DNA of 64,000 bases from Octopus sinensis (lineage: Eukaryota): assembly GCF_006345805.1 (NCBI RefSeq), contig NC_042997.1:213280001-213344000 (forward strand). The letters are read 5' to 3'. The first letter of the stretch is position 1. The number at the start of each line of letters is the position of its first letter. This document shows positions 1,112-61,531 of the stretch, piece after piece. A program made the position numbers and the translations under genes. The notes under the pieces are model-generated. The model did no database searches. It was given only the letters and a program-made list of their open reading frames with translations, and was not told the DNA's origin.

Positions 1112-1491
1112 ACAAACAATAACTCTGGGCACCTTTTCAAACTCCACCTGTCTAACACCCGTGGACATGTTTACAAAGTCAGAAAACAGCACAGCTCCTT
1201 CCATGACTTTCAGAAACATTTTTTCATGCTAAGAGTTGCTGAAGCATGGAACAAACTGCCGGCATCAGTTGTTAGTTGTCGGAGCACTGCATCCTTCAAA
1301 ACTTCCATGCTTCCTGAGATTCGCCAACACTACACCTGATTTTCTCCCCTCCATACACATGCAAGCATGTATCTAACTCATACACTGTTCGCTTTCCAGA
1401 CATTTGTACATTACTGCATATACTCTATACGCACTTTTGACAAGTTGTGGTGCACCTGAGCACTGTATACAATAATTTCATTATTATTATT
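1112..1491 (+). mobile_element. CR1/L2-group LINE 3' end fragment
   Basis: Encodes TRGHVYKVRKQH...FFMLRVAEAWNKLPASVV...FK, the typical CR1 ORF2 C-terminus; followed by a 3' UTR and (ATT)n tail; same sequence recurs many times in the window. Confidence 0.85.
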
Positions 1492-2761
1492 GTAAGTAGG
1501 AAGGTAGACAAATCACAAATGCCTTCAGGTAGATGGCCCTGCTCGATCTGTAGAAAAGGTGTAGGTAGAAACTCTATAAAATGCACCAAGTGTAAGCTAT
1601 GGACACATAAGAGATGCAGCAATGTCAAAGGAAGGCTAACTAGGAAAATAGTTTTTGTATGTGGCAGATGCTCAGGAGCAATAAACACTGAAAATGCGCA
1701 GAGACCAACATCCGCCACATTCCAGGGAGAAAAACTAGAAGTAGTTAATAGCTTCCGTTACCTAGGTGACCAAGTCAGTAGTGGGGGAGGCTATAAGAAT
1801 AGCCTGGGCAAAGTTCAGACAGCTCTTACCTCTGCTGGTGACAAAGGGCCACTCGCTCAGAGTAAAAGGCAGACTGTATGATGCATGTGTACGAACAGCC
1901 ATGCTACATGGTAGTGAAACATGGGCTGTGACTGCTGAGGATATGCGTAAGCTCGCAAGAAAGGAAACCAGTATGTTCCGATGGATGTGTAATGTCAGTG
2001 TACATACTCAACAGAGTGTAAATACCTTGAGAGAAAAGCTGGACCTAAGAAGCATCAGATGTTGTGTGCAAGAGAGACGTTTGCACTGGTATGGTCATGT
2101 GGTGAGAATAGATGAAGATAGTTGTATGAAAAAGTGCCACACCCTAGCGATTGAGGGCACCTGTGGAAGAGGTAGACCCAGGAAAACCTGGGACGAGGTG
2201 GTGAAGCACGACCTTCGAACTTTAGGTCTCACTGAGGAAATGACTAGAGACCGAGACCTTTGGAAGTATGCTGTGCGTGAGAAGACCCGGCAGGACAAGT
2301 GAGACTATAACCCGTGGCCTTTACCTGGGATGTAGCCAGTCCACTTATGCATACCTTTCCTTCTTGGGAGACAAAACTCTACTTGTGAAGACCTGTTGAG
2401 GCAAGTGAGAATCAGAATCGAAATCGATCAACATCAATGGAAATTGTAGCTGTGATACCAGCACCGGTGGCACGTAAGAGAACCATCCGAACGTGGCTGT
2501 TGCCAGCGCTGCCCCGACTGGCCTCCATACCGGTGGCACATAAAAAGCACCATTCAATCGTGGCCATTGCCAGCCTCGCCTGGCATGTAAAAAGCACCCA
2601 CTATACTCACGGAGTGGTTGGTGTTAGGAAAGGCATCCAGCCGTAGAAACATTGCCAGATCAGACTGGGCCTGGTGCAGCCAATCTGGCTTCCCAGACCC
2701 CAGTTGAACCGTCCAACCCATGCTAGCATGGAAAGCAGACACTAAACGATGATAATGATGA
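1492..2761 (+). mobile_element. 5'-truncated RTE-clade LINE (RT C-terminus with PHD-like insert, 3' UTR, (GAT)n tail)
   Basis: ORFs 1447-1881 and 1766-2302 give LEVVNSFRYLG, KGRLYDACVRTAMLHGSETW and GRGRPRKTW; one frameshift; 3' UTR with ~60-bp repeats ending in aaacgatgataatgatg. Confidence 0.9.
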
Positions 2762-3155
2762 TTATTATATCTATGATAGCATTCAAGAAAAGGATTGCTG
2801 TGCGCCTCCTCTCAGCAAAGTCACTACTTTCCCCTCTAATTTAGTGACTGGTTTCAGTTCCAGTCTTGTGTGTTTTATAGGTGGATGGAGGAACTCTTAC
2901 GCCAACTGGACAACACTAATAGATATCACCCCTTCCAATATTGTTTCCTTGTCATTACCACCTCCATCTTGTCTCACAAGTTGCCCCAACTATTGCTGCC
3001 AATCCAGTCAACATCATCTACTTCAACCTCCACAGCCACACAACTGTCTCTCTCCTTCATCTATGTATTTCTGATGTTTGTTTTCCTGTTATTTTCAGTC
3101 TCTCTGGTTGTTATCACACTTTCTAATATGTCAGCATTGAAATATCATTAGTTAT

Positions 3156-3521: not shown

Positions 3522-4931
3522 ATGGAGAAGAAATTGAATGAGAGTTGCATTCATAATGAAAGGGAGCCTGATAAGGGTCATACAGGGAAGATATACCTGT
3601 GTGACATCTGTGGGAAGTCTTTTAAGATAGGAAGATATTTAATCCAACATAAATTAATCCACACAAATTCAAAACTCTATAATTGTGATACATGTGGTAA
3701 AAGGTTCTCTACAAATCAATGTTTGTCTAACCACAAACGCATTCATACAGGAGAAAAACCATATCATTGTGATATTTGTGGCAAAACATTCTCTCAAAAT
3801 AGCAACTTGTTAAACCACAAACGTATTCATACAGGGGAAAAGCCATATCACTGTGATATTTGTGGTAAATCATTTTCTATAAATAGTAATTTACTGAAAC
3901 ATGTACGTATGCATACAGGTGAGAAACCATATCATTGTGATATCTGTGGCAAAGCATTCTCTGTAAAATGTAGCTTATTGAAACACAAACATACTCATAC
4001 AGGAGAAAAGCCATTCCACTGTGATATTTGTGGTAAAGCATTTTCTGAAAACGGCAATTTACTGAATCACAAACGTATTCACACAGGAGAAAAACCATAT
4101 CACTGTGATATTTGTGGTAAATCATTCTCTGAAAATAGTAATTTATTGAAACATAAGCGCATGCATACAGGTGAGAAACCATATCATTGTGATATCTGTG
4201 GCAAAGCATTCTCCGTAAACAGTCATGTGTCTAAGCACAAACGTATTCACACAGGTGAGAAACCATACCTGTGTGCTATCTGTGGTATGACATTCTCTCA
4301 AAGTTCTAATTTATTAACCCATAAACGTATTCATACAGGAGAAAAGCCATATCATTGTGATATCTGTGGTAAAACTTTCAATGCTAATGGCAATTTATCT
4401 AACCACAAGCGTATTCATACAGGGAAGAAACAATATCACTGTGATATCTGTGGTAAATCACTATCACAGAAAGGTCGTTTAATATCTCATAAACGTATTC
4501 ATACAGGAGAAAAACCATACCACTGTGATATATGTAGCAAAAAGTTCTCTACTAATGAATATTTATCTAACCACAAACGTATTCACACGGGAGAGAAACC
4601 ATACCGCTGTGACATTTGTGGTAAAGCATTCTCTGGGAATAGTCACTTATTGACTCATAGACGTATTCATACAGGTGAGAAACCATATCACTGTGATATC
4701 TGTGGTAAATCATTTTCTGATGGTAGCCATTTATCTAAACACAAACGTATTCACACAGGCGAGAAACCACATCACTGTGATATCTGTGGTAAATCATTCT
4801 CTCAGAATATTAATTTACTAACCCATCGACGTATTCACACGGGAGAGAAACCATATCATTGTGATATCTGTGGCAAAGCATTCTCTCTAAATTGCCATTT
4901 ATCTAATCACAAACGTATTCATACAGGTTAG
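3522..4931 (+). CDS. C2H2 zinc-finger protein, 16 tandem fingers, no KRAB-like domain seen
   Basis: Open frame with repeated CDICGKxF...[11 protein letters not shown]; ATG at 3522 (the ORF track used TTG 3501). Confidence 0.92.
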
Positions 4932-4991
4932 GAGACATTCCACTGTGATATACATGCCAGATAATACTTTCAACAAGGTAATTTATTAACC

Positions 4992-5615
4992 ATTGCAGCG
5001 TGGAAGGTGTTTATAAGCCATTTAAGAAACACACAAAACCGTTAGATTCACTTCAACATTTAAATTTAATTTGTCAAAATATTTTCGGCGCTTTGAGTCC
5101 AAGACCTGTTCACTGACAAAACTTCGTACTGCATCTCAGTAAATCATTCTCTCAGAATATTAATTTTCTAACCCATCGACGTATTTACACAGGAGAGAAA
5201 CCATATCATGAGGGTTGCATTCATAATGAAAGGGAGCCTGATAAGGGTCATACAGGGAAGATATACCTGTGTGACATCTGTGGGAAGTCTTTTAAGATAT
5301 TTAATCCAACATAAATTAATCCACACAAATTCAGTTACAGTTCCAGTCTTGTGTGTTTTACTGGTGGATGGAGGAACTCTTACACCAACTGGACAACACT
5401 AATAGATATTACCCCTTCCTTCAATATTGTTTCCTTGTCGTGATAACAACCAGAGAGACTAAAAATAACAGGAAAACACTTAAATTTAAATGTTGAAGTG
5501 AATCTAACGGTTTTGTGTGTTTCTTAAATGGCTTATAAACACCTTCCACGCTGCAATTGTTTTCGTTCCAGCACACGATCTCAGATCAAGTCACTCGCTA
5601 TGCAAGTACATCTCC
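4992..5615. mobile_element. Composite insertion: Penelope-like repeat ends in inverted orientation around four captured pieces of the local ZNF locus
   Basis: 77-bp inverted repeat 4992-5068/5481-5557; direct repeat gtaatttattaacc at 4978-4991 and 5616-5629; internal pieces match 4789-4859, 3538-3671, 2851-2953 and (inverted) 3079-3117. Confidence 0.8.
5070..5120 (-). ncRNA. Minimal type I hammerhead-ribozyme-like motif (G3:C8 variant)
   Basis: Minus strand UUUGUCA-GUGAACA-GGUC..GCGCC-GAAA-AUAU-UU-UGACAAA: 7-bp stem I, core UGA..A/GAAA, palindromic stem III; stem II is decayed. Confidence 0.45.
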
Positions 5616-5649
5616 GTAATTTATTAACCTGTAAGCATTTATAATTAAC

Positions 5650-6137
5650 AGAACCATACATATCTACTATGCAATTTACACCAGCAATGCTACAACAACA
5701 CCTTAAGAATAAACGCAACTATGCCTCTCCTGGTCTCGATGGTGTTACATACCTACTTCTCAAATGCGGTGGGTACTTTCTTCTAAGCCAACTTTCTCTA
5801 TTCTTCCAATTCTGTCTTGACAATGGTGTTACTCCAGAACAGTGGAAAACTGCCAGTGTTATCCCTCTGCTCAAAAAAGGCGAACGCACATCACCTGTCA
5901 ACTATCGCAGTTGTTAGTTGTCGGAGCATTGCATCCTTCAAAACTTCCATGCTTCCTGAGATTCGCCAACACTACACCTGATCTTTCTCCCCTCCATACA
6001 CACACAAGCATGTATCTGACTCATACACTGTTCACTTTCCAGACATTTGTACATTACTGCATATACTCTATACGCACTTTCTGACAAGTTGTGGTGCACC
6101 TGAGCACTATACAATAATTTCATTATTATTATTATTA
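5650..6137 (+). mobile_element. Internally deleted CR1-like LINE
   Basis: SPGLDGV...PEQWKTASVIPLLKKGERTSPVNYR (RT N-terminal domains) joined at ~5909 directly to the CR1 3' end and (ATT)n tail. Confidence 0.8.
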
Positions 6138-6201
6138 CTTGTAATATTTGTGCTAAAACATTGTCTTATTAACCTATTATCTAAGTATTATCAGATATAT
6201 T

Positions 6202-8958: not shown

Positions 8959-10363
8959 GAATCGAAGGGCCTTAGAGTCAATCTAGCTAAAACCAAAGTC
9001 ATAATAAGTAGGAAGGTAGACAAATCACAAACGCCTTCAGGTAGATGGCCCTGCTCGATCTGTAGAAAAGGTGTAGGTAGAAACTCTATAAGATGCACCA
9101 AGTGTAAGCTATGGACACATAAGAGGTGCAGCAATGTTGAAGGAAGGCTAACTAGGAAGATGGTTTTTGTATGTGGCAGATGCTCAGGAACAATAAACAC
9201 TGAAAATGCTCTGAGACCAACTTCTGTTACTTTCCAGGAAGAAAAACTAGAAATAGTTGATAGCTTCCGTTACCTAGGTGACCAAGTCAGTAGCGGGGGC
9301 GGGTGTGCTGAAAGTGTAACTGCTAGAGTAAGAATAGCTTGGGCAAAGTTCAGAGAGCTCTTACCTCTGCTGGTGACAAAAGGCCTCTTGCTCAGAGTAA
9401 AAGGCAGACTGTATGACACGTGTGTACGAACAGCCATGCTACATGGCAGTGAAACATGGGCTGTGACTGCTGAGGATATGCATAAGCTCACAAGAAATGA
9501 AGCCAGTATGCTCCGATGGATGTGTAATGTCAGTACTCATACTCGACAGAGTGTAAGTACCTTGAGAGAAAAGCTGGACCTAAGAAGCATCAGTTGTGGT
9601 GTGCAAGAGAGATGTTTGCGCTGGTATGGTCATGTGGCGAGAATGGATGTAGATAGTTGTGTGAAAAAGTGCCACACCCTAGCAGTTGAGGGAACCTGTG
9701 GAAGAGGCAGACCCAGGAAAACCTGGTATGAGGTGGTGAAGCACGACCTTCGAACTTTAGGTCTCACTGAGGAAATGACTAGAGACCGAGACCTCTGGAA
9801 GTATGCTGTGCGCGAGAAGACCCGGCAGGACAAGTGAAACCATAACCCGTGGCCTTCTACATGGGATGTAGACAGCCCACTTATGCATACCTTTCCTTCT
9901 TGGGACACAAAACTCTACATGTGAAGACCTGTTGAGGCAAGTGAGAATCGAAATCGATCAATGGAAATTGCAGCTGAGTTACCAGTGCCGGTGGCACGTA
10001 AGAGAACCATCCGAATGTGGCCGTTGCCAGTGCCGCCCTGACTGGCCTCGTGCCGGTGGCACATAAAAAGCACCATCCGTTCATGGCCGTTGCCAGCGCC
10101 GCCCAGACTGGCCTCGTGCCAGTGGCACGTACAAAGCACCATCCGTCTGTGGCGTTTGCCAGCCTTGCTTGGCCCCCGTGCCGGTGGCACGTAAAAGGCA
10201 CCATCCGTTCGTGGCCGTTGCCAGCGCCGCCCCGACTGGCCACGGACGGATGGTGCTTTTTACGTGCCACCCGCACAGGTGCCAGACGGGGCTGGCAAAC
10301 GGCCACAGACGGATGGTGCTTTTTACGTGACACCGACATGGAGGCCAGTCGGGGCGGTGCTGG

Positions 10364-33013: not shown

Positions 33014-34252
33014 TTAAGACTTTACTCTGGTGTGTATTCGTTCGTGTCTTTTTAACAGACTGTTAGTGATAAAAGATTTCTCACAGACTTTACAATGATA
33101 AGGTTTCTTACCAGTGTGTATTCTTCTGTGAACTACAAGATTAGAATCATCAGAGAATGATTTACCACATATTTCACAACGAAAGGGTTTTTCCCCAGTG
33201 TGGCTACGCATGTGGATAACAAGACTACAATTAACAGAGAATGATTTGCCACATATTTCACAATGGTACGGTTTTTCCCCAGTATGGCTACGTATATGGA
33301 TTTCAAGATTAGAATTATCAGAGAATGATTTGCCACATATTTCACAATGGAAAGGTTTTTCTCCAGTGTGGATTCGTTGGTGACTTGTCAAATCACTGCT
33401 ATTCACAAAACACTTCTGGCATACTCCACACTGGTAAGGTTTCTCTCCACTGTGGATCCGTTTGTGACTGGTTATATAGCTATTGTCAACAAACGATTTC
33501 CCGCATATATCACAGTGATAGGGTTTCTCTCCGCTGTGGATTCTTCTGTGTCTTGTTAAACTACTGTTATTGATAAAGCATTTGCCACACACATCACAGT
33601 GGAACGGTTTCTCTCCAGTGTGACTGCGTATGTGCACTACAAGACTTGAATTATCAGAGAAGCATTTCTCGCATATCTCACAGTGGAAAGGTTTCTCTCC
33701 GGTGTGGCAGCGTATGTGGCTAACGAGGCTGGAATTCTGAGTGAATGATTTGCCACACACATCGCAATGATAAGGTTTCTCGCCAGTGTGGATCCTTTTG
33801 TGAACGACAAGATAGGAATTATCAGTGAATGTTTTCCCACACACATCACAATAACAGGCTTTTTCGCCAGTGTGAATTATTCTATGTTTTTTAAGCTTAG
33901 AATTACTAACAAAAGATTTCCCGCATATTTCACAGTTGTAAGGTTTTTCTCCGCTGTGGATTCTTTTGTGCTTCGTTAAATAACTATTATAATCGAAAGA
34001 TTTCCCACAGATTTCACAGTGGAACGGTTTTCCTCTGTCGTGTATTTCTTTGTGTGCGAAGAATTCCCGTTCTGAAGAAAATGTTTTCTTACAAACCTCA
34101 CAGCAATATTCAGGAATATTTCTCTCTGGTGATGTTTGTTTAGTAAATGTCTCACAAGATAAAGAGGTCTCACCACTGTGTGTTTCTGTTACTGAATCGA
34201 TATTATTGAAAACGGTTGGGTTTAAAGTGTCCAAGGGATTAACGTCTTCCAT
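33014..34252 (-). CDS. C2H2 zinc-finger protein, 13 fingers
   Basis: 412-aa open frame; leader [12 protein letters not shown]... shared with paralogues at 24745 and 35168. Confidence 0.92.
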
Positions 34253-34550
34253 ATTAAAGAATTTGAGAAGTCTTTAAAACTGAGAAATGCCAACCAATAT
34301 ATGATAAGGTACAGCTTCTTGTTTCTCATCTCAGGATTGCTTGGAAGAAAATAGGCAAAGAAGATATATTTTCTACTTAAAACTGAGAAATTCCTGTCCA
34401 ATGCAGACCACTACGATTCTGTTTCTCGTCTCCGATATTACGGGACCCAGTTTACATGATATAATGGCATTAATTAATACATTAATTAATACAGATGACG
34501 TAATTAAACTAATTGCAAAATAACGGTGTCGTTGATCATTTTCACCTTAC

Positions 34551-34998: not shown

Positions 34999-35167
34999 GT
35001 AAGTATCTTCATTAGTTAATTTAGTTAATTTAATTACGTCATTTATAGTAATTATTCGAATTATATCATGTAATCACAGTTCCGTATTATCTGAGACGAG
35101 AAACAGAATCCTAATCGATAGTATTCACGGGCATTTCCAGTTTTTGATGCTTCTCAAATTCTTTAAT

Positions 35168-36253
35168 ATGGAAGACGTTAATCCCTTGGACACTTTAAAC
35201 CCAACCGTTTTCAATGATATCGATTCAGTAACAGAAACACACAGTGGTGAGACCTCTTTATCTTGTGAGACATTTACTAAACAAACATCACCAGAGAGAA
35301 ATATTCCTGAATATTGCTGTGAGGTTTGTAAGAAAACATTTTCTTCGGAACGGGAATTCTTCGCACACAAAGAAATACACGACAGAGGAAAACCGTTCCA
35401 CTGTGAAATCTGTGGGAAATCTTTCGATTATAATAGTTATTTAACGAAGCACAAAAGAATCCACAGCGGAGAAAAACCTTACAACTGTGAAATATGCGGG
35501 AAATCTTTTGTTAGTAATTCGAATCTTGTTACTCACAAACGTAGTCACAGTGGAGAAAAACCTTATCGTTGTGATGTGTGCGGGAAAGCCTTTATGATCA
35601 ACAGTTATTTAACAGCACACAAACGAATCCACACTGGAGAGAAACCTTGCCGTTGCGAAATCTGTGGGAAATCCTTCTCTGATTGTTCCAGTCTTATAGT
35701 TCACAAACGCAGTCACACCGGAGAAAAACCTTATCAGTGTGATGTGTGCGGGAAAGCATTTGTTTCCAACAGTAATTTAACAAAACACAAGATAATACAC
35801 AGTGGAGAGAAACCGTTTCACTGTGAAATCTGTGGCAAATCTTTCACTCAGAATTCAAGTCTTGTAATTCACGTCCGTAGTCACACGGGAGAACAACCCT
35901 ATCACTGTGAAATTTGTGGGAAATCTTTTGGGAATAATCGTGATTTAAAGAGTCACGAACGAATCCATACTGGTGAAAAGCCGTACAATTGTGAAATTTG
36001 CGGGAAATCGTTTTCTGTTAATTCTTGTCTTGTGGTTCACAGGAGAATCCACACTGGAGAAAAACCTTATCATTGTGATGTATGTGGGAAATCGTTCTCT
36101 GATTATTCCAGTCTTGTAGTTCACAAAAGAATCCATACCGGTGAAAAGCCATATCGATGTGGAATCTGTGCTAAATCATTTATCACAAATGGTCACTTAA
36201 AAACACACACACAAATACACAGTGGCGAAAAGTCTTTTAACTGTGAAATGTAA
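35168..36253 (+). CDS. C2H2 zinc-finger protein, 11 fingers
   Basis: Open frame from ATG 35168; acceptor catttccag at 35132-35140; AATAAA at ~36305. Confidence 0.92.
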   Translation: MEDVNPLDTLNPTVFNDIDSVTETHSGETSLSCETFTKQTSPERNIPEYCCEVCKKTFSSEREFFAHKEIHDRGKPFHCEICGKSFDYNSYLTKHKRIHSGEKPYNCEICGKSFVSNSNLVTHKRSHSGEKPYRCDVCGKAFMINSYLTAHKRIHTGEKPCRCEICGKSFSDCSSLIVHKRSHTGEKPYQCDVCGKAFVSNSNLTKHKIIHSGEKPFHCEICGKSFTQNSSLVIHVRSHTGEQPYHCEICGKSFGNNRDLKSHERIHTGEKPYNCEICGKSFSVNSCLVVHRRIHTGEKPYHCDVCGKSFSDYSSLVVHKRIHTGEKPYRCGICAKSFITNGHLKTHTQIHSGEKSFNCEM

Positions 36254-45491: not shown

Positions 45492-46675
45492 GGCGAAGGT
45501 AAAGCGTGTGCACAGTCACCCATCAGACGAAAGTGAAACATCCGGAGTTGATGTTTTGAAAGTGAGGTGGGGGGGGGGAATGGGTCTTCAGTGTTTCTTT
45601 AAGAAAAATTTAAATTCCCTGATTCGTAATTTTTATATATGTGGATTAAAAAAAAAAAATCTTCAAAAAGTTAAAAATTAGGAAATTGAAGGAGTCGAAA
45701 TTTTGAAAACGTGATTTTTGAGCAAAATCGTATTCCCCTATATTGAAAACACAGAATCTTTTCCTTTTGAACGGCGGTTTTCAACACAATTTCTAGTTAA
45801 CTAAACACTTTTAAACTTCATATACTGGTAGAATGTGTTTATAAAACATCATTTTTTCTTGGCTTTATTGAGAAAATTCTATATGTTGTAACATATTTCC
45901 ACTTTAAAATCGAGCATTTCGGCAATTTTAACCAATCAAATACGTCCATTTGTGGTGAAAACATACCGTGCTGTATGAATATGTCCCTCGTTTAAGAAAC
46001 AGATTAGATTTATTTACATTTGCGAAGAAAAAAAGTACCCTTCCCCCACCCCTAACTCTAACTAATCCTAACCCTAAAACAGATTGAAATGCAATAGATC
46101 GATACTAGGGTTATAATTATGGGTGACATTTTCATTTGACACTGCTAGAAAAAAAATTCCATTTTCCGTAGCGGTGTCGTATGAAATTGTCACCCATAAT
46201 TATGGCCCTAGTATCGATCTATTGCATTTCAATCTGTTTTAGGGTTAGGATTAGTTAGAGTTAGGGGTGGGGGAAGGGTACTTTTTTTCTTCGCAAATGT
46301 AAATAAATCTAATCTGTTTCTTAAACAAGGGACATATTCATACAGCACGGTATGTTTTCACCACAAATGGACGTATTTGATTGGTTAAAATTGCCGAAAT
46401 GCTCGAAATTAAAGTGGAAATATGTTACAAAATACAGAATTTTCTCAATAAAGCCAATAGAAAATGATGTTTTATAAACACATTCTACCAGTATACGAAG
46501 TTTAAAAGTGTTTAGTTAACTAGAAATTGTGTTGAAATCTGCCGTTCAAAAGGAAAAGATCCAAAGCACAATTCCGAAAAAAGTTTGGAACCCCACCCCC
46601 CAAAATACTGAGCAATCTTTCGTTCAGAGTCATATCGAAAGATAGCCGGTGGGGTGCACACGCTTTACCTTCGCC
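45492..46675. mobile_element. Non-autonomous TIR element (22-bp TIR) hosting a nested palindromic MITE
   Basis: ggcgaaggtaaagcgtgtgcac at 45492-45513 and its reverse complement at 46654-46675; TTAA close to both ends. Confidence 0.6.
45754..46562. mobile_element. ~800-bp palindromic MITE, probably Merlin family
   Basis: ~390-bp arms around a ~21-nt loop; termini G(A/G)ATCTTTTCC...GGAAAAGATCC; 8-bp flanks aaaacaca/aaagcaca (7/8). Confidence 0.85.
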
Positions 46676-50432: not shown

Positions 50433-50704
50433 GGCCAGTTTGGTGGTAATGTAGAAACATTATTTTTTGAATGTGGGGTAGCTGTGGGAAGAGCCTAGAA
50501 AGTTGGGTAATTACTTTTAGAAGACGAGGAGAAGAAACAAAGTTACTGACGAGTACTCAAAACTTGCATCTTATTCAGTTTCCAAAGTCTGTACTACGAA
50601 ACCAATATCAACACAAGCAAGTTGCAAGAGCGACTTCAGCAGTGACACACACACACACACACACTCACCAATGCACACAAATGAAAGGCAATGAATGTGT
50701 GTGT

Positions 50705-51085
50705 GCTCACTGACAAAACTTCATGCTGCATCACATTCGCTAAGTTTTGTCAGTGAACAAAACAGGTCACAGTTTCAAAGTGCCACAAATGAAATTTTTA
50801 ATTAAGTGAAACTGGTAATACTTAGATACAGAGGTCCCTTATCGGTACTATTTAAATACAGTATTACAAAACATTTTAAATGTACACTGTGTGGACATGT
50901 AATTATATCCTAACCCTCCCCTTCATATCGTTACATAGATGCATTGGGACCTCTGTATTAGTGTTGTGAAACTAATGGTTTTTGTGTCTCCTTGAATGGC
51001 TTACAAAATATCTATGCTGCAATTGTTTTTGTTTCAGCACATGATCTCAGATCAAGTCACTTGCTATGCAAGTACCTCTTCATAA
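50705..51085 (+). mobile_element. Second, older copy of the Penelope-like repeat, interrupted by a small MITE
   Basis: 14-bp inverted repeat cactgacaaaactt/aagttttgtcagtg; decayed gtgaaca..ggtcac..gtgcc motif; 3' part matches 5510-5615. Confidence 0.65.
50829..50955. mobile_element. Small TA-flanked MITE (Tc1/mariner-type)
   Basis: TA|CAGAGGTCCC ... GGGACCTCTG|TA. Confidence 0.6.
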
Positions 51086-53018: not shown

Positions 53019-53347
53019 AAACAATTCCTTGGCATCTCTCTTAAGGGCACACCTATTTCTTCACAAAAGACTTAAGGCCTACTATTTATAAATGTTCTAA
53101 AATCTACGCAGCCTTGGGGTTTTTTTTTATCTCCTTACGGAAATTTTTTTTATATACACAGGCAGATATTTGACCAAAGTTGGACTCCTTATTCGCATAA
53201 TCACCAAAATTAGCCATTACTCATTGCAACAGAGAAAAGGGTAATAATTGTTGAACACCAAAAATTATCCAGATATTTGATTTGCAACTTCAATTACAGT
53301 CGAGTCAAAGTTGAGGATAAATGTCTTGAGAGAAAAATACACTCCCT

Positions 53348-53404
53348 ATAATAATAATGATGATGATGATGATAATAATAATAATAACGATAATGATCAT
53401 GATG

Positions 53405-53450
<46 letters not shown>

Positions 53451-53746
53451 CAATAATGATCATGATGATAATAATAATAATGATGATGATAGTAATGATA
53501 ATGATGATAGTAATAATAATGATAATGATAATAATAATCATAATAATAATGATGATAGTAATAATAAAAATAATAATTATAATAATAATAATGATAATAA
53601 TAATAACGATAATGATCATGATGATAATAATAATGATGATGATGATGATAGTAATAATAATAATAATAATAAAAATAATAATGATAATGATCATGATGAT
53701 AATAATAATGATGATGATGATGATAGTAATAATGATAATGATGATG

Positions 53747-53780
<34 letters not shown>

Positions 53781-53815
53781 TGATGATGATGATGATGATA
53801 ATAATAATAATGATA
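53348..53815. repeat. (AAT/GAT)n trinucleotide array
   Basis: Direct reading. Confidence 0.95.
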
Positions 53816-53817
53816 AA

Positions 53818-55095
53818 GTAACATGGATGGGGTAGGGGGTGTAGGCATTCTCCTTAATAAGATCATAGAGGTTGTCAGGGTTTGCGATAGAGTGCTTAAG
53901 CTCAGGTTAGTCCTACAGAATGGCACAGCTACGATTATCTCCGCCTATGCCCCAAATGATCAGAAGGACCACTTTTATGATACCCTTCTACAGGCTACCT
54001 CAAAAACTAGTGGCAAGGACCTCATCTTTGTGGGTGGAGACTTTAATGGGCATGTTGGGTGGGAATCGGGTATCTTCACTGGGGTCATGGTGGCCATGGT
54101 ATTGGCACCAGAAATGATGAGGGAACTAGACTACTGGAATCCTGTGATGCATGTAACCTTTTAATCTGCAACACTAACTTCGGGAAGCCTGACTGCCACC
54201 TTATAACCTATCAGCCAGGAGACTCCGCTAGCCAAATAGACTTCATCCTCACCAGACAGCGGGATGCAGGGTCGCTCTTAAATACAAAGACCCTCCCGGG
54301 TGAAGAATGTATCCCTCAGCATAGGCTAATCATTTGTGACTTTAGGCTTGAGGCCAGAAGGACTCCAAGAAACAGACCAATCCAGAAAAGAAGGATTTGA
54401 AAGCTAAAGAACCCTTCACATGGTCAGAGATTTAGGGACATCTTCATCAAGAAATTTGATGAGAGGGAGAAGGAACTACAGACGTCGGACATAGAAGGTA
54501 GCTGGAAATTCCTACGGGACAGCTTGCAGAGTGCCACAGACCAAGTCTGTGGATGGTGCAAAGTCCCTTCCAGACCTAGAGTTACGTGGTGGTGGTGGAA
54601 TAGTGCAGTAGGTGGTGGAATAGCCATTAGTGCAAAGAAACAGGCCTGGAAGGATGGGGGTAGCAGGGAACTGTACCAAGTAGCCAAAAGGGAGGCCGGG
54701 CGGCAGGTATACATAGCCAAAGATATAGCAGAAAAGAAGAAGTTTGCCAATGTCCAGCAACGTGAGGACCGAAGAACAGGTATTTCGGATTGCTAGACAG
54801 TGTGTGAGAGAAAATAGTGATGTTACAGGAGAGAAATGTGTCCGCATGGATGATGGAGCACTTGCTTTTAATGTTGGTGAAAAGAAAGAGGCTTGGAGAA
54901 GCCATTATGAAAGACTGCTGAATGAGGAGAATGAATGGGAGGAGGAGAGCCTGTCAAATGTTGACCCAGTAGAGGGACCAGCTATCCAAATAGACAGCTC
55001 CCTTGTAGTTAAGGCAATTAAGGGTATGAAACCAGGTAAAGCCCCCGGCCCATCAGGTATCGCTGCTGAGATGCTTAAAACAGCTAGTTATGTGG
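53818..55095 (+). mobile_element. RTE LINE 5' part: APE endonuclease, tether and RT start, frameshifted
   Basis: GVGILL...IISAYAP...VGGDFNGHVG...RNDEGTRLL...ICNT.F...QIDFIL...QHRLIICDF; MKPGKAPGPSGIAAEMLK. Confidence 0.88.
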
Positions 55096-55098
55096 GCT

Positions 55099-55640
55099 AT
55101 TTAAGCAGAGGGGGGAGAAGCGAGTAATTTACTTAACGAAATTCTAAGAGATGGAGCGAACAAGGGTCAGTCGGAATTTAGGGACGGTCAGAATTTAAGC
55201 AGAGGGGGGAGAAGCGAGTAATTTACTTAACGAAATTCTAAGAGATTGAGCGAACAAGGGTGAGTCGGAATTTAGGGACGGTCAGAATTTAAGCAGAGGG
55301 GGGAGAAGCGAGTAATTTACTTAACGAAATTCTAATAGATGGAGCTAAAAACTAACAGGTTGTCAGTGATGAAAATATTTAAACACAACAGCAAACTGTC
55401 AGTACTGAAAACATTTAGATAGTTAACTCGAGAGGATATTAGGAATGGAGAAATGAGGGAGAAGAAAGAGGGAAGAGAAAAATGTTCTTAGCTTGACGTC
55501 ACGATCATCGTATGGTGAAATAAAAAATGGCCAAGACTGCAAACAGCGAACAATGGTCATTCGGAATTTAGGGACGGTCAGAATTTAAGCAGAGGGGGGA
55601 GAAGTGAGTAATTTACTTAAAGAAATTCTAACAGGTTGTC
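55099..55640. repeat. 94-bp tandem repeat (three adjacent units plus a displaced partial fourth)
   Basis: atttaagcagagggggagaagcgagtaatttacttaacgaaattct starts at 55099, 55193, 55287 and 55583. Confidence 0.9.
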
Positions 55641-56090
55641 AGTAATGAATAATAATAATAATAATAATAATAGTAATACTAATAATAATAATAATAATGA
55701 TATTAAGAATAATAATAGTAGTAATAGTAGTAGTAGTAATAGTAATTGTAATACTAATAGTAATAGTAATAATAATAATAGTAGTAGTAGTAGTAGTTGT
55801 AGTGATAGTAGTAGTAGTAGTAATATTAATAGTAATAGAAATATTAATAGTAATGGTAATAATAATAATGATAATAGTAGTATAGTAGTAGTAGTATTAT
55901 TATTAGTAGTAGTATTAGTGGTAGTAGTAGTAGTAAAGGTAATAGTAATAATAATAATAATAGTAGTAGTAATATTAATGATAATGATAATAAAAATAAT
56001 AATCATAATTATAATAATAATAATAGTAGTAGTGGTAGTAGTAATAGTAATTGTAATAATAATAATAATATATGTAGCATAGTAGTAGTA

Positions 56091-56127
<37 letters not shown>

Positions 56128-56347
56128 TATTAATAATGATAATAATTATAATAATATTAATGATAATGATAATAATAATTATGTTAATAAGAATAACAAC
56201 TACAACAATAATAATAAAAATAAAATTAATAATAATATTATTTTTGATAATAATAATAATGATAATAATAATATTAATAATAATAATATCATTATTAATA
56301 ATAATATTAATAATAATAATGATAATAATAATAATAATAATAATAAT

Positions 56348-56462
56348 ATGAATAATATTCATCCGAACAAGAATTTGAATTCAGAATGAAGTGATGGGTG
56401 AAATGCAGTTGTAGCTTAGCACTTCGTCCAGCATACTAACGATTCCGCCAGCTTACCATCTT
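56348..56462 (-). mobile_element. SINE family C-like head embedded in the AAT array
   Basis: Inverted near-copy of 62089-62203. Confidence 0.7.
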
Positions 56463-56487
56463 AATAATAATGATGATGATGATGATG

Positions 56488-56530
<43 letters not shown>

Positions 56531-56545
56531 TAATAATAATAATAA

Positions 56546-58077
56546 GAGCAAGAACAGACATACAAATATTTAGGGATAAACGAAGGCTCTGGTATTCAGC
56601 ATGCAAGCATGAAAGAGAAAATCAGGAAGGAATGTTATAGGAGAGTTCGTGCAGTCCTGAAATCTGAACTAAATGCACGTAACAAGGTGTTAGCTATAAA
56701 TTCCTTAGCAGTTCCAGTTGTTACTTATAGCTACAATGTGTTGAACTGGAATATGAGTGAAGTAAAGAATATAGATAGAAAAATACGCAAGCTGCTGAGT
56801 TGTAATAGGATGCACCACCCAAAGGCAGACGTAGATCGCCTTTACCTTCCCAGAGCCCAAGGAGGTCGAGGCCTGATCCAATTTGAACTAGCTTACAAAA
56901 CAACCACAATTGGACTGGCCAAATATCTCGAAATATCGAATGACTGGATGCTAAAGCTCGTGGAAAATCACGAGAGACGAAAGAAGATTCATTCTATCAT
57001 CAAGGAAAGCAAAAAATTTGCTATTGATCTCGTGCAGGATACCCAAACTGAACAACCCGAGGGAAGTACGGCAACTATTGTTGCAAAGAAGGTGAAAATG
57101 ATGGCAATGAAAAAAGCGCACGAGCAATTGGCTGATAGGTGGGAGGAGAAACCTCTGTACGGCAAATATGTGACCCGCAGCAAACAAGCTGATGTTGACC
57201 AGAAGCAAACCCATCAGTGGCTGCGGAGCTCAGGGCTAAAAGCAGAGAGCAAAGGTTTCATCCTGGCTGCTCAAGACCAAAGCCTATTAACCCGGAACTA
57301 CCAGGCCAATGTGATGAAAAATGGAGCAGACCCAAAATGCCGATTCTGCAACGACATGATTGAAACAGTGGACCACCTAATCTCTGGATGTAAAGTCTTA
57401 GCACCAGTGGAGTATAAATTAAGACATGACAGAGTTGGCCAATATCTCCACTGGCTAATAAGTCGGCATTACAATATCAAAACTGCCGACAAGTGGTATA
57501 ATCACCACCCTGAGGCTGTAACTGAAGGAGAAAATGTAACGATTCTGTGGGACTTTCCAGTACATACAGACCGAACCATCAAGGCCAATAAACCAGATAT
57601 TGTTGTGAAAGACCAAAACAATAAAGTTTGCTTATTGATCGACATGAGCATCCCCTGTGATCATAATATCTCAGCGAAAGAGTTTGACAAGCTCAGAAAA
57701 TATAAAGACCTGCTCATTGAAATTGAGAAAATGTGGCATCTCAAGGCGGTTACAATACCAGTGATCGTAGGAGCACTAGGAATGATCAAGAAGGGAACCG
57801 AAAATTATATGAGAATGATCCCTGGCTTACCATCCCTGCAAGAAGTGCAAAAGATTGTCTTAACTGGTACATCACACGTATTGAGAAGAGCACTGTCGAT
57901 GTGAGAACTGTTGCTGCTCATGTATTTTAATTTAACTTTAAAAAAAAAAAAAAAAAATGAACGAACTACTGAGTTTGGTTTAATGGCCTACCAATATACA
58001 CTATGAGTTTCTTTGCCCTAGGAGTCGGGAAGACACTCGGCAAGAAATGGAAGAAAATTTGAAAGAAGAAAAAAAAA
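56546..58077 (+). mobile_element. 5'-truncated R4/Dong-clade non-LTR retrotransposon with RLE endonuclease, in (TAA)n
   Basis: Uninterrupted frame 56546-57904: YKYLG (RT end), RLYLPRAQGGRGL, CRFC..ETVDHLISGC knuckle, RHD, KPDIVV..LIDMSIP..K..KY; short 3' UTR, then (TAA)n. Confidence 0.92.
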
Positions 58078-58689
58078 GTAATAATAATAATAATAATAAT
58101 GATAATAATAATAGTAATACTAATAATAAAAAAAAATAATAATATTAATAATAATAGTAGTAGTACTAGTAGTGGTATTAGTAATAGTAATAATAATAAT
58201 AGTAGTAGTAGTAATAGTAGTAGTAGTAGTTATATTAATAGTAATAGAAATATTAATAGTAATAATAGTAATGGTAATAATAATAATAGTAGTAGTAGTA
58301 GTAGTGGTAGTAGTAATAGTAGTAGTAGTAGTAGTAGTGGTAGTAGTTGTAGTAGTAGTAGTAAAGGTAATAGTAATAATATTAATAATAATAATAGTAG
58401 TAGTAGTAGTAATAGTAATATTAATGATAATGATAATAATAATAGTAGTAGTAGTAGTAGAAATTGTAATAATAATATATGTAGTATGTGTTATTAGTAA
58501 TAATAATAATAATAATAATATTAATAATGATAATAATTATAATAATAGTATTAGTATTAGTAGAAGTAGTAATATTAATAGTAATAATAATAATAGTAGT
58601 AGTGGTACTATTACTATCAATATTTCAATTACTATTACTGTTACTACTAATACTACTACTACTATCATTAATATTATTTTTATTATTAT

Positions 58690-58752
58690 ACATGGCAGTG
58701 CCCCAGCATGGCCACAGCTCATAAGCTGAAACTAGAATCAATCAATCAATCA
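58690..58752 (+). mobile_element. SINE family B-like 3' terminal fragment
   Basis: ggcagtgccccagcatggccacagctc..gctgaaactag followed by (ATCA)n. Confidence 0.55.
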
Positions 58753-58795
58753 ATTATTATTATTACTACCACTAATACTACTACAACTAAACTAC

Positions 58796-58834
<39 letters not shown>

Positions 58835-59666
58835 TACTATTAGTATTACTACTACTACTACTACTACAGCTTCTACTACTACTACTACTACTATTATTAT
58901 TATTATTATTAATATTATTATCATCATTACTATTATTATCATTATTACTATTACAATTACTAATACTATTACTACTACTACTAATACTACTACTAATATA
59001 ATATATATTATTATTATTATAATTATTATTATTTCTATTAATATTAATAATAATAATAATAATAATAATAGTAGTAGTAATAGTAGTAGAAGTAGTAAAA
59101 GTAGCAGCAGTAGCAGTAGTGGTCATAGTTGTAGTATTAGTAGTTGTAGTAGTAGTAGTATTAGTAATAGTAATAACAATAATAATGATAATGATAATAG
59201 TAATAATAATAATAATAATAACAGTAATAGTAGTAGTAGTAATACTATTACTATTAATATTTCAATTACTATTACTGTTACTACTACTACTACTATTATT
59301 ATTATTATTATTATTACTACTACTATTACTACTAATGTTATTATTATTATTATATTATTATAATTATCATTATTACTATTACTACTACTGCTACTACTAC
59401 TATTATTATTATTATAATTATCATAATTATTATTATTTTTATTACTATTACTATTACTATAAAAATTACTACTACTACAACTACTACGACTACTTCTACT
59501 ACTTCTACTACTACTAGTATTACTATATATTATATTATTATTATTATTATGATCATTATCATTATTATTATTTATTATTATTATTATTATTATCATTTAT
59601 ATTATTATTATTATTATTATTATTTTAATTATTATTATTATCATAGTACTACCATTATTATTATTA

Positions 59667-59706
<40 letters not shown>

Positions 59707-59798
59707 TAATATTATTATTAATATTATCATTAATATTAGTATTATTATTATTATCATTATTATTATTATCATTATTATTACGATTATTATTATTATTG

Positions 59799-59830
<32 letters not shown>

Positions 59831-60148
59831 GTCATTATTATTTTTTTATTATTAATTATTTTATTATCATTATTATTATCATTATTATAATTATTATTAT
59901 CATTATTAATATTATTATTATTATAATAATAATTATTATTAATTTTATTATTATTATTACTATTATTATTTTTATCATTATTGTTATTATTATTAATATT
60001 ATTATTAATATTATTATTATTTTTATTATCATTATTATTAATATTATTATTATTATTTTTATTATTATTATTATTATTATCATTATTATTATCATTATCA
60101 GTATCATTATTATTATTATTCATATTATTATTATTATCATCATTATCC

Positions 60149-60186
<38 letters not shown>

Positions 60187-60827
60187 ATTATTTTTTATTA
60201 TTATAATTATTATTTTTGTTATTATTACTATTATTATTATTGTTGTAATTATTATTACTATTATTATTATTGTAATTATTATTATTATTATTTTTATTAT
60301 TATTATTATTATCCTTATAATTAACATTATTATTAATATAATTATTATTATCATTTTTACTATTATCATAATCATTATCATTTTCATTATCATTATTGTT
60401 ATTATTTTTCTTCTTCTTATTCTTCTTATTGTTGTTGTTCTTGTTTTTATTGGTAATTTTATTATTATCATTATTATTATTATTATAATTATTATTAATA
60501 TTATTATATTATTATTATTATTGTTATTATTATTAACATTATTTTTATTTTTAATTAATATTTTTATTATTATTATTATCATTATCATTATCTTTATTAT
60601 TATTATTAATATTATCCTTATTATTATTATTATTATTATTATCATTATTATTATTATTATCATTGTTATAATTATCATTATTATTATTATTATCATTATT
60701 ATCATCATTATTATTATCATTATTATTATTAATATTATTATCATTATTATTATTTTTAATATCATTATCCTTATCATTGTCGTTATTATTGTTATTATTA
60801 TTATTATTATTACTATTATTATTATTC

Positions 60828-60858
<31 letters not shown>

Positions 60859-60982
60859 CATTATATTATTATTATTATTATTATTAATATTATTATCATT
60901 ATTATTATTTTTAATATCATTATCCTTATCATTGTCGTTATTATTGTTATTATTATTATTATTATTACTATTATTATTATTC

Positions 60983-61013
<31 letters not shown>

Positions 61014-61027
61014 CATTATTATTATTA

Positions 61028-61066
<39 letters not shown>

Positions 61067-61085
61067 CATCATTATTATTATTAAT

Positions 61086-61120
<35 letters not shown>

Positions 61121-61364
61121 CATTATTATTGTTATTATTATTATTATTACTATTATTATTATTCTTGTTATTATTATTATTATTATGATTATCCTTATTA
61201 TTATTATCATTATTAATATTATTAATATTATTATTATTCTTATTATTAATATTATTATTAGTAACATTATTATTATTATAAATATTATTTTTTATATTAT
61301 TATCATTAACACTATCATCATTATTATTATTATCATTATTATCATCATCATCATCATTATTATA

Positions 61365-61531
61365 ATGGTGAGCTTGCGGAATCGTTAGTACGCTGGACGA
61401 AGTGCTGAGCTTCAACTGCTTTTCACCCATCACTACCTTCTGAATTCAAATTCTTGTTCGGATGAAATGAGTATCTGCGGAGCATTGGGGTCGATGTGAT
61501 CTAATTGCCCTTCGGCACATATTCAGGCCTT

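What the first reader, a model, noticed from the sequence alone, without database searches (positions are those of the whole stretch)
4978..5629. TSD-flanked patchwork insertion assembled from four pieces of its own host locus
Seen: between 11-14-bp direct repeats (gtaatttattaacc) lie, in order, an inverted repeat end (4992-5138), a copy of finger 15 (5139-5209 vs 4789-4859, 3 mismatches), the start of the CDS (5207-5333 vs 3538-3671, joined by ATG microhomology, 8-nt deletion), upstream DNA (5334-5439 vs 2851-2953), an inverted upstream piece (5440-5478 vs 3079-3117) and the repeat end in direct orientation (5481-5615). Two pieces lie upstream of the putative acceptor, so the template was DNA or unspliced RNA. 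Inference: serial template switching during a Penelope-like insertion or polymerase-theta-type repair. This is a possible route for shuffling fingers within and between ZNF genes.
Basis: partly seen in the sequence, partly recalled or inferred. Interest (0 to 1): 0.75.

Follow-up and report, generated by a model that had tools for sequence, protein, structure and literature searches.

The report
Retroelement insertion stuffed with host-gene scraps
Behind the stop codon of an octopus zinc-finger gene sits a 624-bp insertion whose two ends are head-to-head copies of a short retroelement and whose middle is stitched from four scraps of the same gene's own neighbourhood, a rare natural record of a polymerase hopping between templates while a mobile element was being inserted.

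Summary
A perfect 14-bp direct repeat (4978-4991 / 5616-5629) brackets 624 bp. In order these are an inverted copy of a ~225-nt repeat, four pieces of the host locus (finger 15, CDS start, two upstream pieces, one of them inverted; 92-97% identical to sources 0.1-2.1 kb upstream), one orphan base, and a direct copy of the repeat's 3' end.

New details:
- The two arms are identical over 78 nt.
- Only the right arm carries the last 58 nt of the repeat.
- The inverted arm flips to direct orientation inside a 14-bp palindromic stem.
- A second, diverged solo copy lies at 50704-51085.
- Junctions have 0-2 nt of microhomology.

The window is Octopus sinensis chromosome CM016859.1.

Best reading: one retroelement insertion primed from both cut target ends, with the gap bridged by about five template switches onto nearby DNA or nascent RNA.

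The architecture resembles published Penelope-like insertions. No hammerhead motif or Penelope ORF was found, and only two copies were available, so membership is unproven.

The insert lies in a dead finger after the stop codon, so no finger shuffling is shown. Reads, other individuals and other species could not be reached.

The parts
3522..4931 (+). Host gene: C2H2 zinc-finger ORF with 16 fingers in an 84-nt register, stop TAG at 4929-4931
4943..4991 (+). Left part of decayed finger 17 (after the stop codon); this is the target of the insertion
   Evidence: 33/49 identical to the finger consensus, in register
4978..4991 (.). Left copy of the target-site duplication, gtaatttattaacc
   Evidence: 14/14 with 5616-5629
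4992..5110 (-). Inverted arm: reverse complement of the repeat from 59 nt before its 3' end inward. It lacks the terminal 58 nt.
   Evidence: 78/78 complementary to 5480-5557; colinear with copy 2
5111..5124 (.). 14-nt palindromic stem sequence (cactgacaaaactt) where orientation flips from inverted to direct
   Evidence: Matches both stem halves of the copy-2 hairpin
5125..5138 (+). Loop of the repeat's 5' hairpin in direct orientation (11/14 to copy 2)
   Evidence: 5107-5138 vs 50704-50735, plus/plus, 28/32. The minus alignment stops at the stem.
5139..5209 (+). Patch C: copy of finger 15
   Evidence: 68/71 to 4789-4859; next best finger 81.5%
5208..5333 (+). Patch D: copy of the CDS start (from 16 nt after the ATG) through finger 1, with an 8-nt slippage deletion. 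It overlaps patch C by the 2-nt AT microhomology.
   Evidence: vs 3538-3671, 1 mismatch
5334..5439 (+). Patch E: copy of DNA 570-670 nt upstream of the ATG, with a 3-nt duplication
   Evidence: vs 2851-2953, 5 mismatches
5440..5478 (-). Patch F: inverted copy of DNA 405-443 nt upstream of the ATG
   Evidence: 38/39 to the reverse complement of 3079-3117
5479..5479 (.). One orphan base (c) that no template accounts for
   Evidence: and reading
5480..5557 (+). Direct arm: the part shared with the inverted arm
5558..5615 (+). Terminal 58 nt of the repeat, present on this side only (a one-sided 'tail')
   Evidence: Absent from the left arm, present in copy 2
5616..5629 (.). Right copy of the target-site duplication. 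Its first 12 nt also resemble the sequence that follows copy 2 (10/12).
4789..4859 (+). Source of patch C (finger 15)
3538..3671 (+). Source of patch D
2851..2953 (+). Source of patch E
3079..3117 (+). Source of patch F. It spans a polypyrimidine-cag acceptor-like site.
50704..51085 (+). Second, solo copy of the repeat. It has a 5' hairpin at 50708-50755, a nested 152-nt insert at 50814-50965 and the same 3' end.

Best explanation
A short non-autonomous retroelement (unit about 225 nt, beginning with a hairpin) inserted once into a dead zinc finger of Octopus sinensis. The target was cut on both strands 14 bp apart.

Both 3' ends primed reverse transcription of the element RNA:
- The bottom strand primed at the element's very 3' end, giving the direct arm with the 58-nt tail.
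- The top strand primed 58 nt further in, giving the inverted arm.

Neither cDNA was completed. One growing end left the element after 135 nt and copied four short stretches (39-134 nt) from within 2.1 kb upstream of the cut, three in gene sense and one antisense. It slipped twice on the way (an 8-nt deletion and a 3-nt duplication). It then returned to the element at its 5' hairpin. There the palindromic stem let the two antisense cDNAs anneal head to head, and the gap was closed.

Shown:
- the anatomy, the TSD and the local best matches of all four patches;
- the orientation flip inside the palindrome;
- 0-2 nt of microhomology at the junctions;
- comparable age of arms and patches.

Inferred:
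- that it was one event;
- which end travelled;
- whether the templates were DNA or nascent pre-mRNA;
- which polymerase did the copying;
- whether the element belongs to the Penelope-like class or is a LINE-dependent element inserted by twin priming.
For: - Perfect 14-bp TSD abutting the homology breakpoints.
- The element's 3' end lies next to the right TSD, and the same 3' end is seen in an independent copy.
- The inverted arm starts exactly at the left TSD with AAC microhomology.
- The arms are 78/78 identical. The patches differ from their sources by 10 substitutions in about 340 nt. Zero differences in 78 nt has P about 0.10 at that rate, so equal age is not rejected.
- Each patch's best hit in the window is in the host locus, with E from 5e-13 to 8e-55, and all four lie on one side of the cut.
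- The order C, D, E, F is not colinear with the gene or with any circular permutation of it, so this is not a deleted paralogue.
- The differences are substitutions (7 transitions, 3 transversions), not the pattern of an assembly chimera.
- Orientation flips inside a 14-bp stem of a hairpin that folds at -21.8 kcal/mol, z -3.7.
- Literature: Penelope-like protein cleaves and extends both strands and starts reverse transcription at two nearby internal sites, which explains a one-sided tail, and it prefers ATT in AT-rich DNA (PMC11167929). Penelope-like insertions show inverted 5' copies, palindromes at inverted junctions and host DNA captured between terminal repeats with TSDs (PMC3846280, PMC8557442). 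L1 twin priming and RT template-switch chimeras are also documented (PMC2912911, PMC13174262).
Against: - There is only one such insertion and one other copy of the element, so the 3' boundary, the 'tail' and the element class rest on n = 2.
- No empty allele, no reads and no second assembly could be examined.
- A return of the polymerase to the element after four excursions is an awkward step.
- One patch (F) has the opposite polarity to the other three, so neither 'all sense RNA' nor 'one DNA strand' explains everything.
- The 78-nt overlap of the arms is not what classical twin priming on a single RNA gives.
- The tail is 58 nt, longer than the 30-40 bp described for Penelope-like elements.
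- No hammerhead motif was found.
- The right flank is only weakly finger-like.
Confidence: 0.6

Rival explanations
1. Two steps. The retroelement first inserted as a plain head-to-head inverted pair. Later the inverted repeat broke at its centre, and the break was repaired by a host pathway that copies nearby sequence (microhomology-mediated break-induced replication, fork stalling and template switching, or polymerase-theta end joining).
For: - The filler sits exactly between the arms.
- All templates lie in cis within 2.1 kb, in both orientations.
- Slippage events occur inside the patches.
- Long inverted repeats are known fragile sites (general knowledge).
Against: - Junction microhomology is only 0-2 nt and there is one orphan base.
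- The patches are longer than typical polymerase-theta insertions.
- The arms show no more divergence than the patches (0/78 against 10 in about 340), so nothing indicates an older insertion.
- The original pair would have had a spacer of about 60-70 nt, which makes hairpin extrusion unlikely.
Confidence: 0.15
2. The mosaic was assembled elsewhere and arrived here ready-made. It could have come from a near-identical paralogous ZNF locus, or as a non-autonomous element that had captured ZNF pieces between its terminal repeats and then transposed. The local sources would then only look like the donors.
For: - Octopus has many hundreds of young C2H2 ZNF paralogues (PMC12988792).
- Penelope-like elements can move host DNA framed by their repeats (PMC3846280).
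- The patches are 1-5% different from the local sources.
Against: - All four patches, including two non-coding upstream pieces, have their only window matches within 2.1 kb of the insertion.
- Landing in the very gene that donated the pieces would be a large coincidence unless the paralogue is very recent.
- Paralogues in the window match patch C at 81.5% or less.
Confidence: 0.1
3. Assembly artefact: chimeric or palindromic long reads produced a false inverted structure.
For: - The arms are perfectly identical over 78 nt.
- Complex Penelope-type structures are known to trouble assemblies (PMC8557442).
- No reads could be checked.
Against: - The patches differ from their sources by 10 substitutions, mostly transitions, plus two slippage indels. 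Misjoined reads of the same locus would not show this.
- The structure is bounded by a clean 14-bp duplication.
Confidence: 0.05
4. A cut-and-paste DNA transposon with terminal inverted repeats captured gene fragments (Pack-type transduplication).
For: Inverted repeats, a flanking direct repeat and internal gene fragments are all present.
Against: - The right inverted repeat ends 58 nt inside the right boundary, so the termini are not symmetrical.
- A 14-bp TSD is unusual for DNA transposons.
- The other copy of the repeat is a solo unit in one orientation.
Confidence: 0.03

Closest known systems
Penelope-like element insertions (inverted 5' copy, one-sided 'tail', captured host DNA between pseudo-LTRs)
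   Same: - Repeat ends sit in opposite orientation directly against a TSD of variable length.
- One end carries a terminal extension.
- A palindrome lies at the head-to-head junction.
- The target is AT-rich and contains ATT.
- Unrelated host DNA lies between the repeats.
Sources: PMC3846280, PMC8557442, PMC11167929.
   Different: - No hammerhead motif, no tandem pseudo-LTR, and no RT/GIY-YIG ORF linked to the repeat.
- The extension is 58 nt rather than 30-40 bp.
- The captured DNA is a four-piece mosaic taken from the target locus itself, not one foreign stretch.
L1 twin priming (5'-inverted LINE and SINE insertions)
   Same: - TSD present.
- The 3' end is direct at one side, and an internally primed inverted segment sits at the other.
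- Short microhomology (AAC) at the internal priming site (PMC2912911).
   Different: - The two arms overlap by 78 nt instead of being adjacent parts of one RNA.
- No poly(A) tail and no TT/AAAA site.
- The arms are joined through 341 nt of foreign filler instead of directly.
Retrotransposition chimeras made by RT template switching (U6/L1, mRNA/L1)
   Same: Extra sequence lies 5' of a truncated element inside the same TSD, mostly in sense orientation, with little junction homology (PMC13174262, PMC4476161).
   Different: - The donors here are not abundant small RNAs or spliced mRNAs from elsewhere.
- They are four fragments of the target locus, including non-coding upstream DNA, and one is antisense.
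- There are about five switches rather than one.
Templated insertions at DNA breaks (polymerase-theta end joining; MMBIR/FoSTeS)
   Same: Several short copies of nearby sequence, in both orientations, with slippage.
   Different: - Junction microhomology is 0-2 nt.
- Patches are up to 134 nt.
- The break was evidently made and primed by a retroelement, given the TSD and the element ends.

Membership tests
Penelope-like element (PLE) insertion | An RT plus GIY-YIG endonuclease ORF belongs to the same family as the terminal repeat | not testable with these tools
   No eukaryotic genome search was available. Six window ORFs scanned against Pfam gave no PLE-type hit. The whole window was not scanned in six frames.
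Penelope-like element (PLE) insertion | An inverted 5'-truncated copy abuts the unit, so inverted repeats flank the insertion inside a TSD | tested here: met
   Arms 4992-5069 and 5480-5557, 78/78, inside a 14-bp TSD
Penelope-like element (PLE) insertion | A short terminal extension ('tail', 30-40 bp) at one end only, reflecting two RT start sites | tested here: inconclusive
   A one-sided 58-nt extension at 5558-5615. It is longer than described, and with one insertion the recurrence of the two end points cannot be checked.
Penelope-like element (PLE) insertion | A palindrome at the head-to-head junction or at the 5' end of the pseudo-LTR | tested here: met
   Orientation flips within the stem at 5111-5124. 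The unit in copy 2 begins with a hairpin at 50708-50755, -21.8 kcal/mol, z -3.7.
Penelope-like element (PLE) insertion | A hammerhead ribozyme motif in the pseudo-LTR (canonical clades; Naiad and Chlamys lack it) | tested here: not met
   No Rfam hit at gathering score in the window or at E<=10 around either copy. No CTGANGA core on either strand.
Penelope-like element (PLE) insertion | Partial tandem arrangement forming direct pseudo-LTRs | tested here: not met
   No tandem copy at either locus
L1-type twin priming | TSD, with the direct 3' end at one side and an internally primed inverted segment at the other | tested here: met
L1-type twin priming | Inverted and direct segments are neighbouring, essentially non-overlapping parts of one RNA and are joined directly | tested here: not met
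   The arms overlap by 78 nt, with 341 nt of filler plus one orphan base between them
L1-type twin priming | Poly(A) tail and a TT/AAAA-type target | tested here: not met
   The element ends ...gtacatctcc with no A tail, and the target is gtaatttattaacc
Polymerase-theta / MMBIR templated insertion | Microhomology of 2 nt or more at most junctions | tested here: not met
   Junctions C/D 2 nt, D/E 0, E/F 0, F/G one orphan base, B/C 0-1
Pack-type DNA transposon | Terminal inverted repeats reach both ends, directly against the TSD | tested here: not met
   The right repeat ends 58 nt inside the right TSD

The most novel reading that the evidence does not exclude
In octopus, a retroelement that primes from both cut ends (Penelope-like) routinely fills its unfinished insertions by copying scraps of the target gene's own DNA or nascent transcript. 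It would thereby duplicate fingers, coding starts and regulatory DNA in cis. This would be a recurrent, RT-driven source of finger and exon shuffling behind the cephalopod C2H2 ZNF expansion, and a source of long 3'-UTR hairpins that could feed the RNA-editing machinery.
Probability: 0.1. Interest if true: 0.75.

Novelty: new variant of a known kind. Interest (0 to 1): 0.45.

Why it matters
How the two cDNA ends of a double-primed retroelement insertion are joined is an open step in the Penelope-like and twin-priming models. This locus preserves a joint made through about five template switches, with the donors still present next door. Polarity, junction homology and slippage can therefore be read directly.

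If such mosaics are common in octopus ZNF clusters, they would link transposon bursts mechanistically to ZNF diversification. As a single, apparently neutral insertion behind a stop codon, this one is at present an instructive anecdote, not evidence of that link.

Tried and rejected
- Searched for the empty site or the same junctions in other assemblies. The host ORF (both starts), its N-terminus, two ORFs inside or beside the patchwork and a neighbouring LINE ORF are not on record. A full-length ZNF protein search was swamped by generic zinc fingers.
- Scanned metagenome contigs for the repeat: 0 hits.
- A transposon ORF search gave only a 98%-identical sewage-metagenome contig.
- Species and coordinates came from two neighbouring ZNF ORFs and from the literature.
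- Tested for a hammerhead or other RNA family: nothing.
- Looked for an ORF start in the repeat's 3' end, as in Penelope-like elements. All three frames are open there, so this is uninformative.
- Looked for a TSD around copy 2: none found.
- Looked for further copies in the window with a profile: none.
- I first claimed that the joined flanks rebuild finger 17 in register. That holds for the left 49 nt. The right flank is not significantly finger-like (P about 0.06-0.08), so the claim was weakened.
- I first read the finger-like stretch at 6139-6166 as a second patch. It is better read as decayed finger 18 behind a 5'-truncated LINE fragment.
- Considered a read-through ZNF-element transcript copied with internal skips. 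Rejected because the piece order C, D, E, F is not colinear.

Full report
**Where this is.** Two neighbouring zinc-finger ORFs of the window are recorded on GenBank assembly GCA_006345805.1, record CM016859.1, at 213,303,014-213,339,545. Published work identifies that assembly as Octopus sinensis (bioRxiv 10.1101/2023.05.16.540928). The window is therefore about 213.270-213.334 Mb of that chromosome, inside a cluster of C2H2 ZNF genes.

The host gene is an ORF at 3522-4931 with 16 fingers in an exact 84-nt register. It ends at a TAG that replaces the usual GAG of the finger linker. The sequence after the stop (4943-4991) is still 33/49 identical to the finger consensus and in register, so it is a dead 17th finger.

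**The observation.**
- A perfect 14-bp direct repeat, gtaatttattaacc, lies at 4978-4991 and 5616-5629.
- Patch C (5139-5209) matches finger 15 (4789-4859) at 68/71. The next best finger anywhere in the window is 81.5% identical.
- Patch D (5208-5333) matches 3538-3671 with one mismatch and an 8-nt deletion lying between two AGATA repeats.
- Patch E (5334-5439) matches 2851-2953 with five mismatches and a 3-nt TTC duplication.
- Patch F (5440-5478) is the reverse complement of 3079-3117 at 38/39.
- E-values run from 5e-13 to 8e-55, so chance is excluded.
- Small corrections: the C/D junction shares AT, not ATG, and base 5479 (c) has no template.

**The repeat at the two ends.**
- The arms 4992-5069 and 5480-5557 are identical over 78 nt. 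The 82-nt, 99% arm reported by the tool adds AAC[C/A], a 3-nt microhomology between the left TSD and the element.
- The right arm runs 58 nt further (5558-5615) up to the TSD, and the left arm lacks those 58 nt.
- A second copy of the repeat lies at 50704-51085. It is 83% identical over the 3' 130 nt (E 2e-30).
- After removing a 152-nt nested insert flanked by GTGAAACT, copy 2 is colinear with the composite of the two arms. That gives a unit of about 225 nt.
- A profile of the two copies finds nothing else in the window.
- The unit begins with a hairpin: a 14-bp stem and 20-nt loop at 50708-50755, -21.8 kcal/mol, z -3.7.
- No Rfam family matches either copy, and neither strand contains a CTGANGA hammerhead core.

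The inner end of the 'inverted' arm is not inverted.
- Up to 5110 the sequence is the reverse complement of the unit.
- 5111-5124 is the palindromic stem, which reads the same in either orientation.
- The next 14 nt (5125-5138) match the hairpin loop of copy 2 in direct orientation.
- Overall, 5107-5138 matches 50704-50735 plus/plus at 28/32, while the minus alignment stops at the end of the stem.
- So the orientation flips inside the palindrome.
- The structure is better described as an inverted unit joined head to head with a direct unit. About 60 nt of that direct unit's interior are replaced by 341 nt of host mosaic plus the orphan base.

**Is it an insertion, and is it real?**
- The 14/14 duplication abuts the points where homology to the repeat ends, and the left copy is native finger sequence. 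No two fingers of the array share this 14-mer.
- My first claim, that the joined flanks rebuild finger 17, holds for the left 49 nt only. The right flank is only weakly finger-like (P about 0.06-0.08).
- An assembly chimera is unlikely. The patches differ from their sources by ten substitutions (seven transitions) and two slippage indels, and misjoined reads of one locus would not show that.
- I could not examine reads, other individuals or other species. The host ORF, its N-terminus and ORFs in or beside the patchwork are not on record in the protein-indexed collections, and a metagenome scan for the repeat was empty.

**What the anatomy says about mechanism.**
- The exact 3' end of a repeat lying against one TSD is the signature of target-primed reverse transcription.
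- An inverted copy that starts at an internal position directly against the other TSD means the second cut end also primed on the element RNA.
- The two cDNAs are both antisense, so they cannot anneal along their 78-nt overlap. They can anneal only where the element is palindromic, and the flip is exactly there.
- Between the flip and the direct 3' arm the product contains four patches. All come from 0.1-2.1 kb on one side of the cut: three in gene sense and one antisense.
- Junction microhomologies are 2, 0, 0 and 0-1 nt, with one untemplated base.
- That pattern fits a reverse transcriptase jumping between templates, or ligation of short fragments. It fits less well with polymerase-theta or MMBIR repair, which usually shows longer microhomology.
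- The order C, D, E, F is not colinear with the gene in either direction or as a circle. This rules out a deleted paralogue or a simple read-through transcript.
- The one-sidedness of the donors fits two models: a DNA end searching its own chromosome arm, or use of the nascent transcript of a polymerase arrested at the cut. The antisense patch fits neither model cleanly.
- Zero differences in the 78-nt arms, against 10 in about 340 nt for the patches, has P about 0.10. Equal age of arms and filler is therefore acceptable, and nothing suggests an older insertion.

**Comparison with what is known.**
- Published Penelope-like elements (PLEs) show an inverted 5'-truncated copy next to the unit and a 30-40-bp tail at one end only. 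They also show palindromes at inverted junctions, AT-rich targets, TSDs of 8-10 bp and more, and cases where unrelated host DNA lies between the terminal repeats inside a TSD (PMC3846280; PMC8557442).
- A purified Penelope-like protein cleaves and extends both strands. It starts reverse transcription at two nearby internal sites, which explains the tail, and it prefers ATT (PMC11167929).
- The present insertion shares the inverted arm, the one-sided extension, the palindrome at the flip and the ATT-containing target.
- It fails on the hammerhead (though the Naiad and Chlamys clades also lack one) and on tandem repeats. Its extension is 58 nt, and no RT/GIY-YIG ORF can be tied to it.
- L1 twin priming (PMC2912911) explains the two arms about as well. 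However, it predicts adjacent rather than overlapping segments and a direct joint.
- RT template-switch chimeras (PMC13174262) are the nearest precedent for the filler. They involve one foreign RNA, not four local fragments.
- I therefore file this as a new variant of a known kind: a double-primed retroelement insertion whose joint was made through a multi-template mosaic of the target locus.

**What it does not show.** The insert lies after the stop codon in a finger that had decayed long before. That finger is about 60% identical to the consensus, whereas the patches are about 3% diverged from their sources. No coding finger was shuffled here. The C/D fusion is in frame, but that has a one-in-three chance, and the 8-nt deletion then breaks the frame. 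The idea that this is a route to ZNF diversification remains a hypothesis that only a genome-wide survey can test.

**Verdict.**
- The best explanation is a single double-primed insertion with about five template switches (confidence 0.6).
- The main rivals are a later repair event at the centre of the inverted repeat (0.15) and a mosaic made at a paralogous locus (0.1).
- Interest is moderate (0.45): a clean and unusually informative junction, but n = 1 and probably neutral.

Noticed in passing
window 45756-46560: A near-perfect palindrome. Two 399-nt arms are 95% complementary and only 7 nt apart. No obvious TSD, and it is unrelated in sequence to the repeat studied here.
   Followed up: partly
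window 33828-34282 and 35138-35592: Two ZNF genes (33014-34252 on the minus strand, 35144-36253 on the plus strand) share a 455-nt head-to-head inverted duplication of their 5' ends at 94% identity. Both proteins start [15 protein letters not shown].
   Followed up: no
window 50814-50965: A 152-nt segment inside the second copy of the repeat is flanked by the 8-bp direct repeat GTGAAACT and has subterminal inverted repeats ATACAGAGGTCCC. It is either a nested MITE-like insertion or the remnant of a deletion in the other lineage. It is unique in the window.
   Followed up: partly
window 5665-6137 and 6139-6200: Forty nt beyond the right TSD begins a 5'-truncated LINE fragment. An 80-codon RT piece (…PGLDGVTYLLL…NYR) is fused directly to a 3' end with an (ATT)n tail. 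That 3' end is 96% identical to 1266-1491, where the upstream reading frame ends in a WNKLP…SFK motif that I recall, from memory only, as CR1-like. Behind the fragment the finger-like sequence resumes (ttgtaatatttgtgctaaaacattgtct…tattaacc), apparently decayed finger 18.
   Followed up: partly
window 1266-2580 versus 5908-6133 plus 9005-10103: The same two retroelement pieces flank the host gene on both sides, in the same order and orientation (96% and 89% identity). They are adjacent upstream but 2.9 kb apart downstream. Coincidence or an old duplication; not resolved.
   Followed up: no
window 4927-4931: The stop codon of the host gene is a TAG at the position of the conserved GAG in the HTGEKP linker (ggttaggag versus ggtgagaaa). 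The array was therefore truncated by a nonsense change, and fingers 17-18 decayed afterwards.
   Followed up: partly
window 53300-61400: About 8 kb is dominated by AAT/ATT/TAC-type trinucleotide microsatellites. These produce long artefactual poly-I, poly-N and poly-Y ORFs on both strands.
   Followed up: no
locus L001 (ENA ERZ22666216, 1983 bp): A contig whose record name (DTU_2022…MG_IT_BO) suggests, as my guess, a sewage metagenome. It encodes a protein 98% identical to the retrotransposon ORF at window 56609-57904, presumably octopus DNA in the sample.
   Followed up: no
window 4992-5069 / 5480-5557: If the host gene's transcript runs through the insert, the perfect 78-bp inverted repeat would form a long double-stranded RNA stem in the 3' UTR. 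That is the kind of structure used by the RNA-editing enzymes that are very active in octopus. This is inference only.
   Followed up: no
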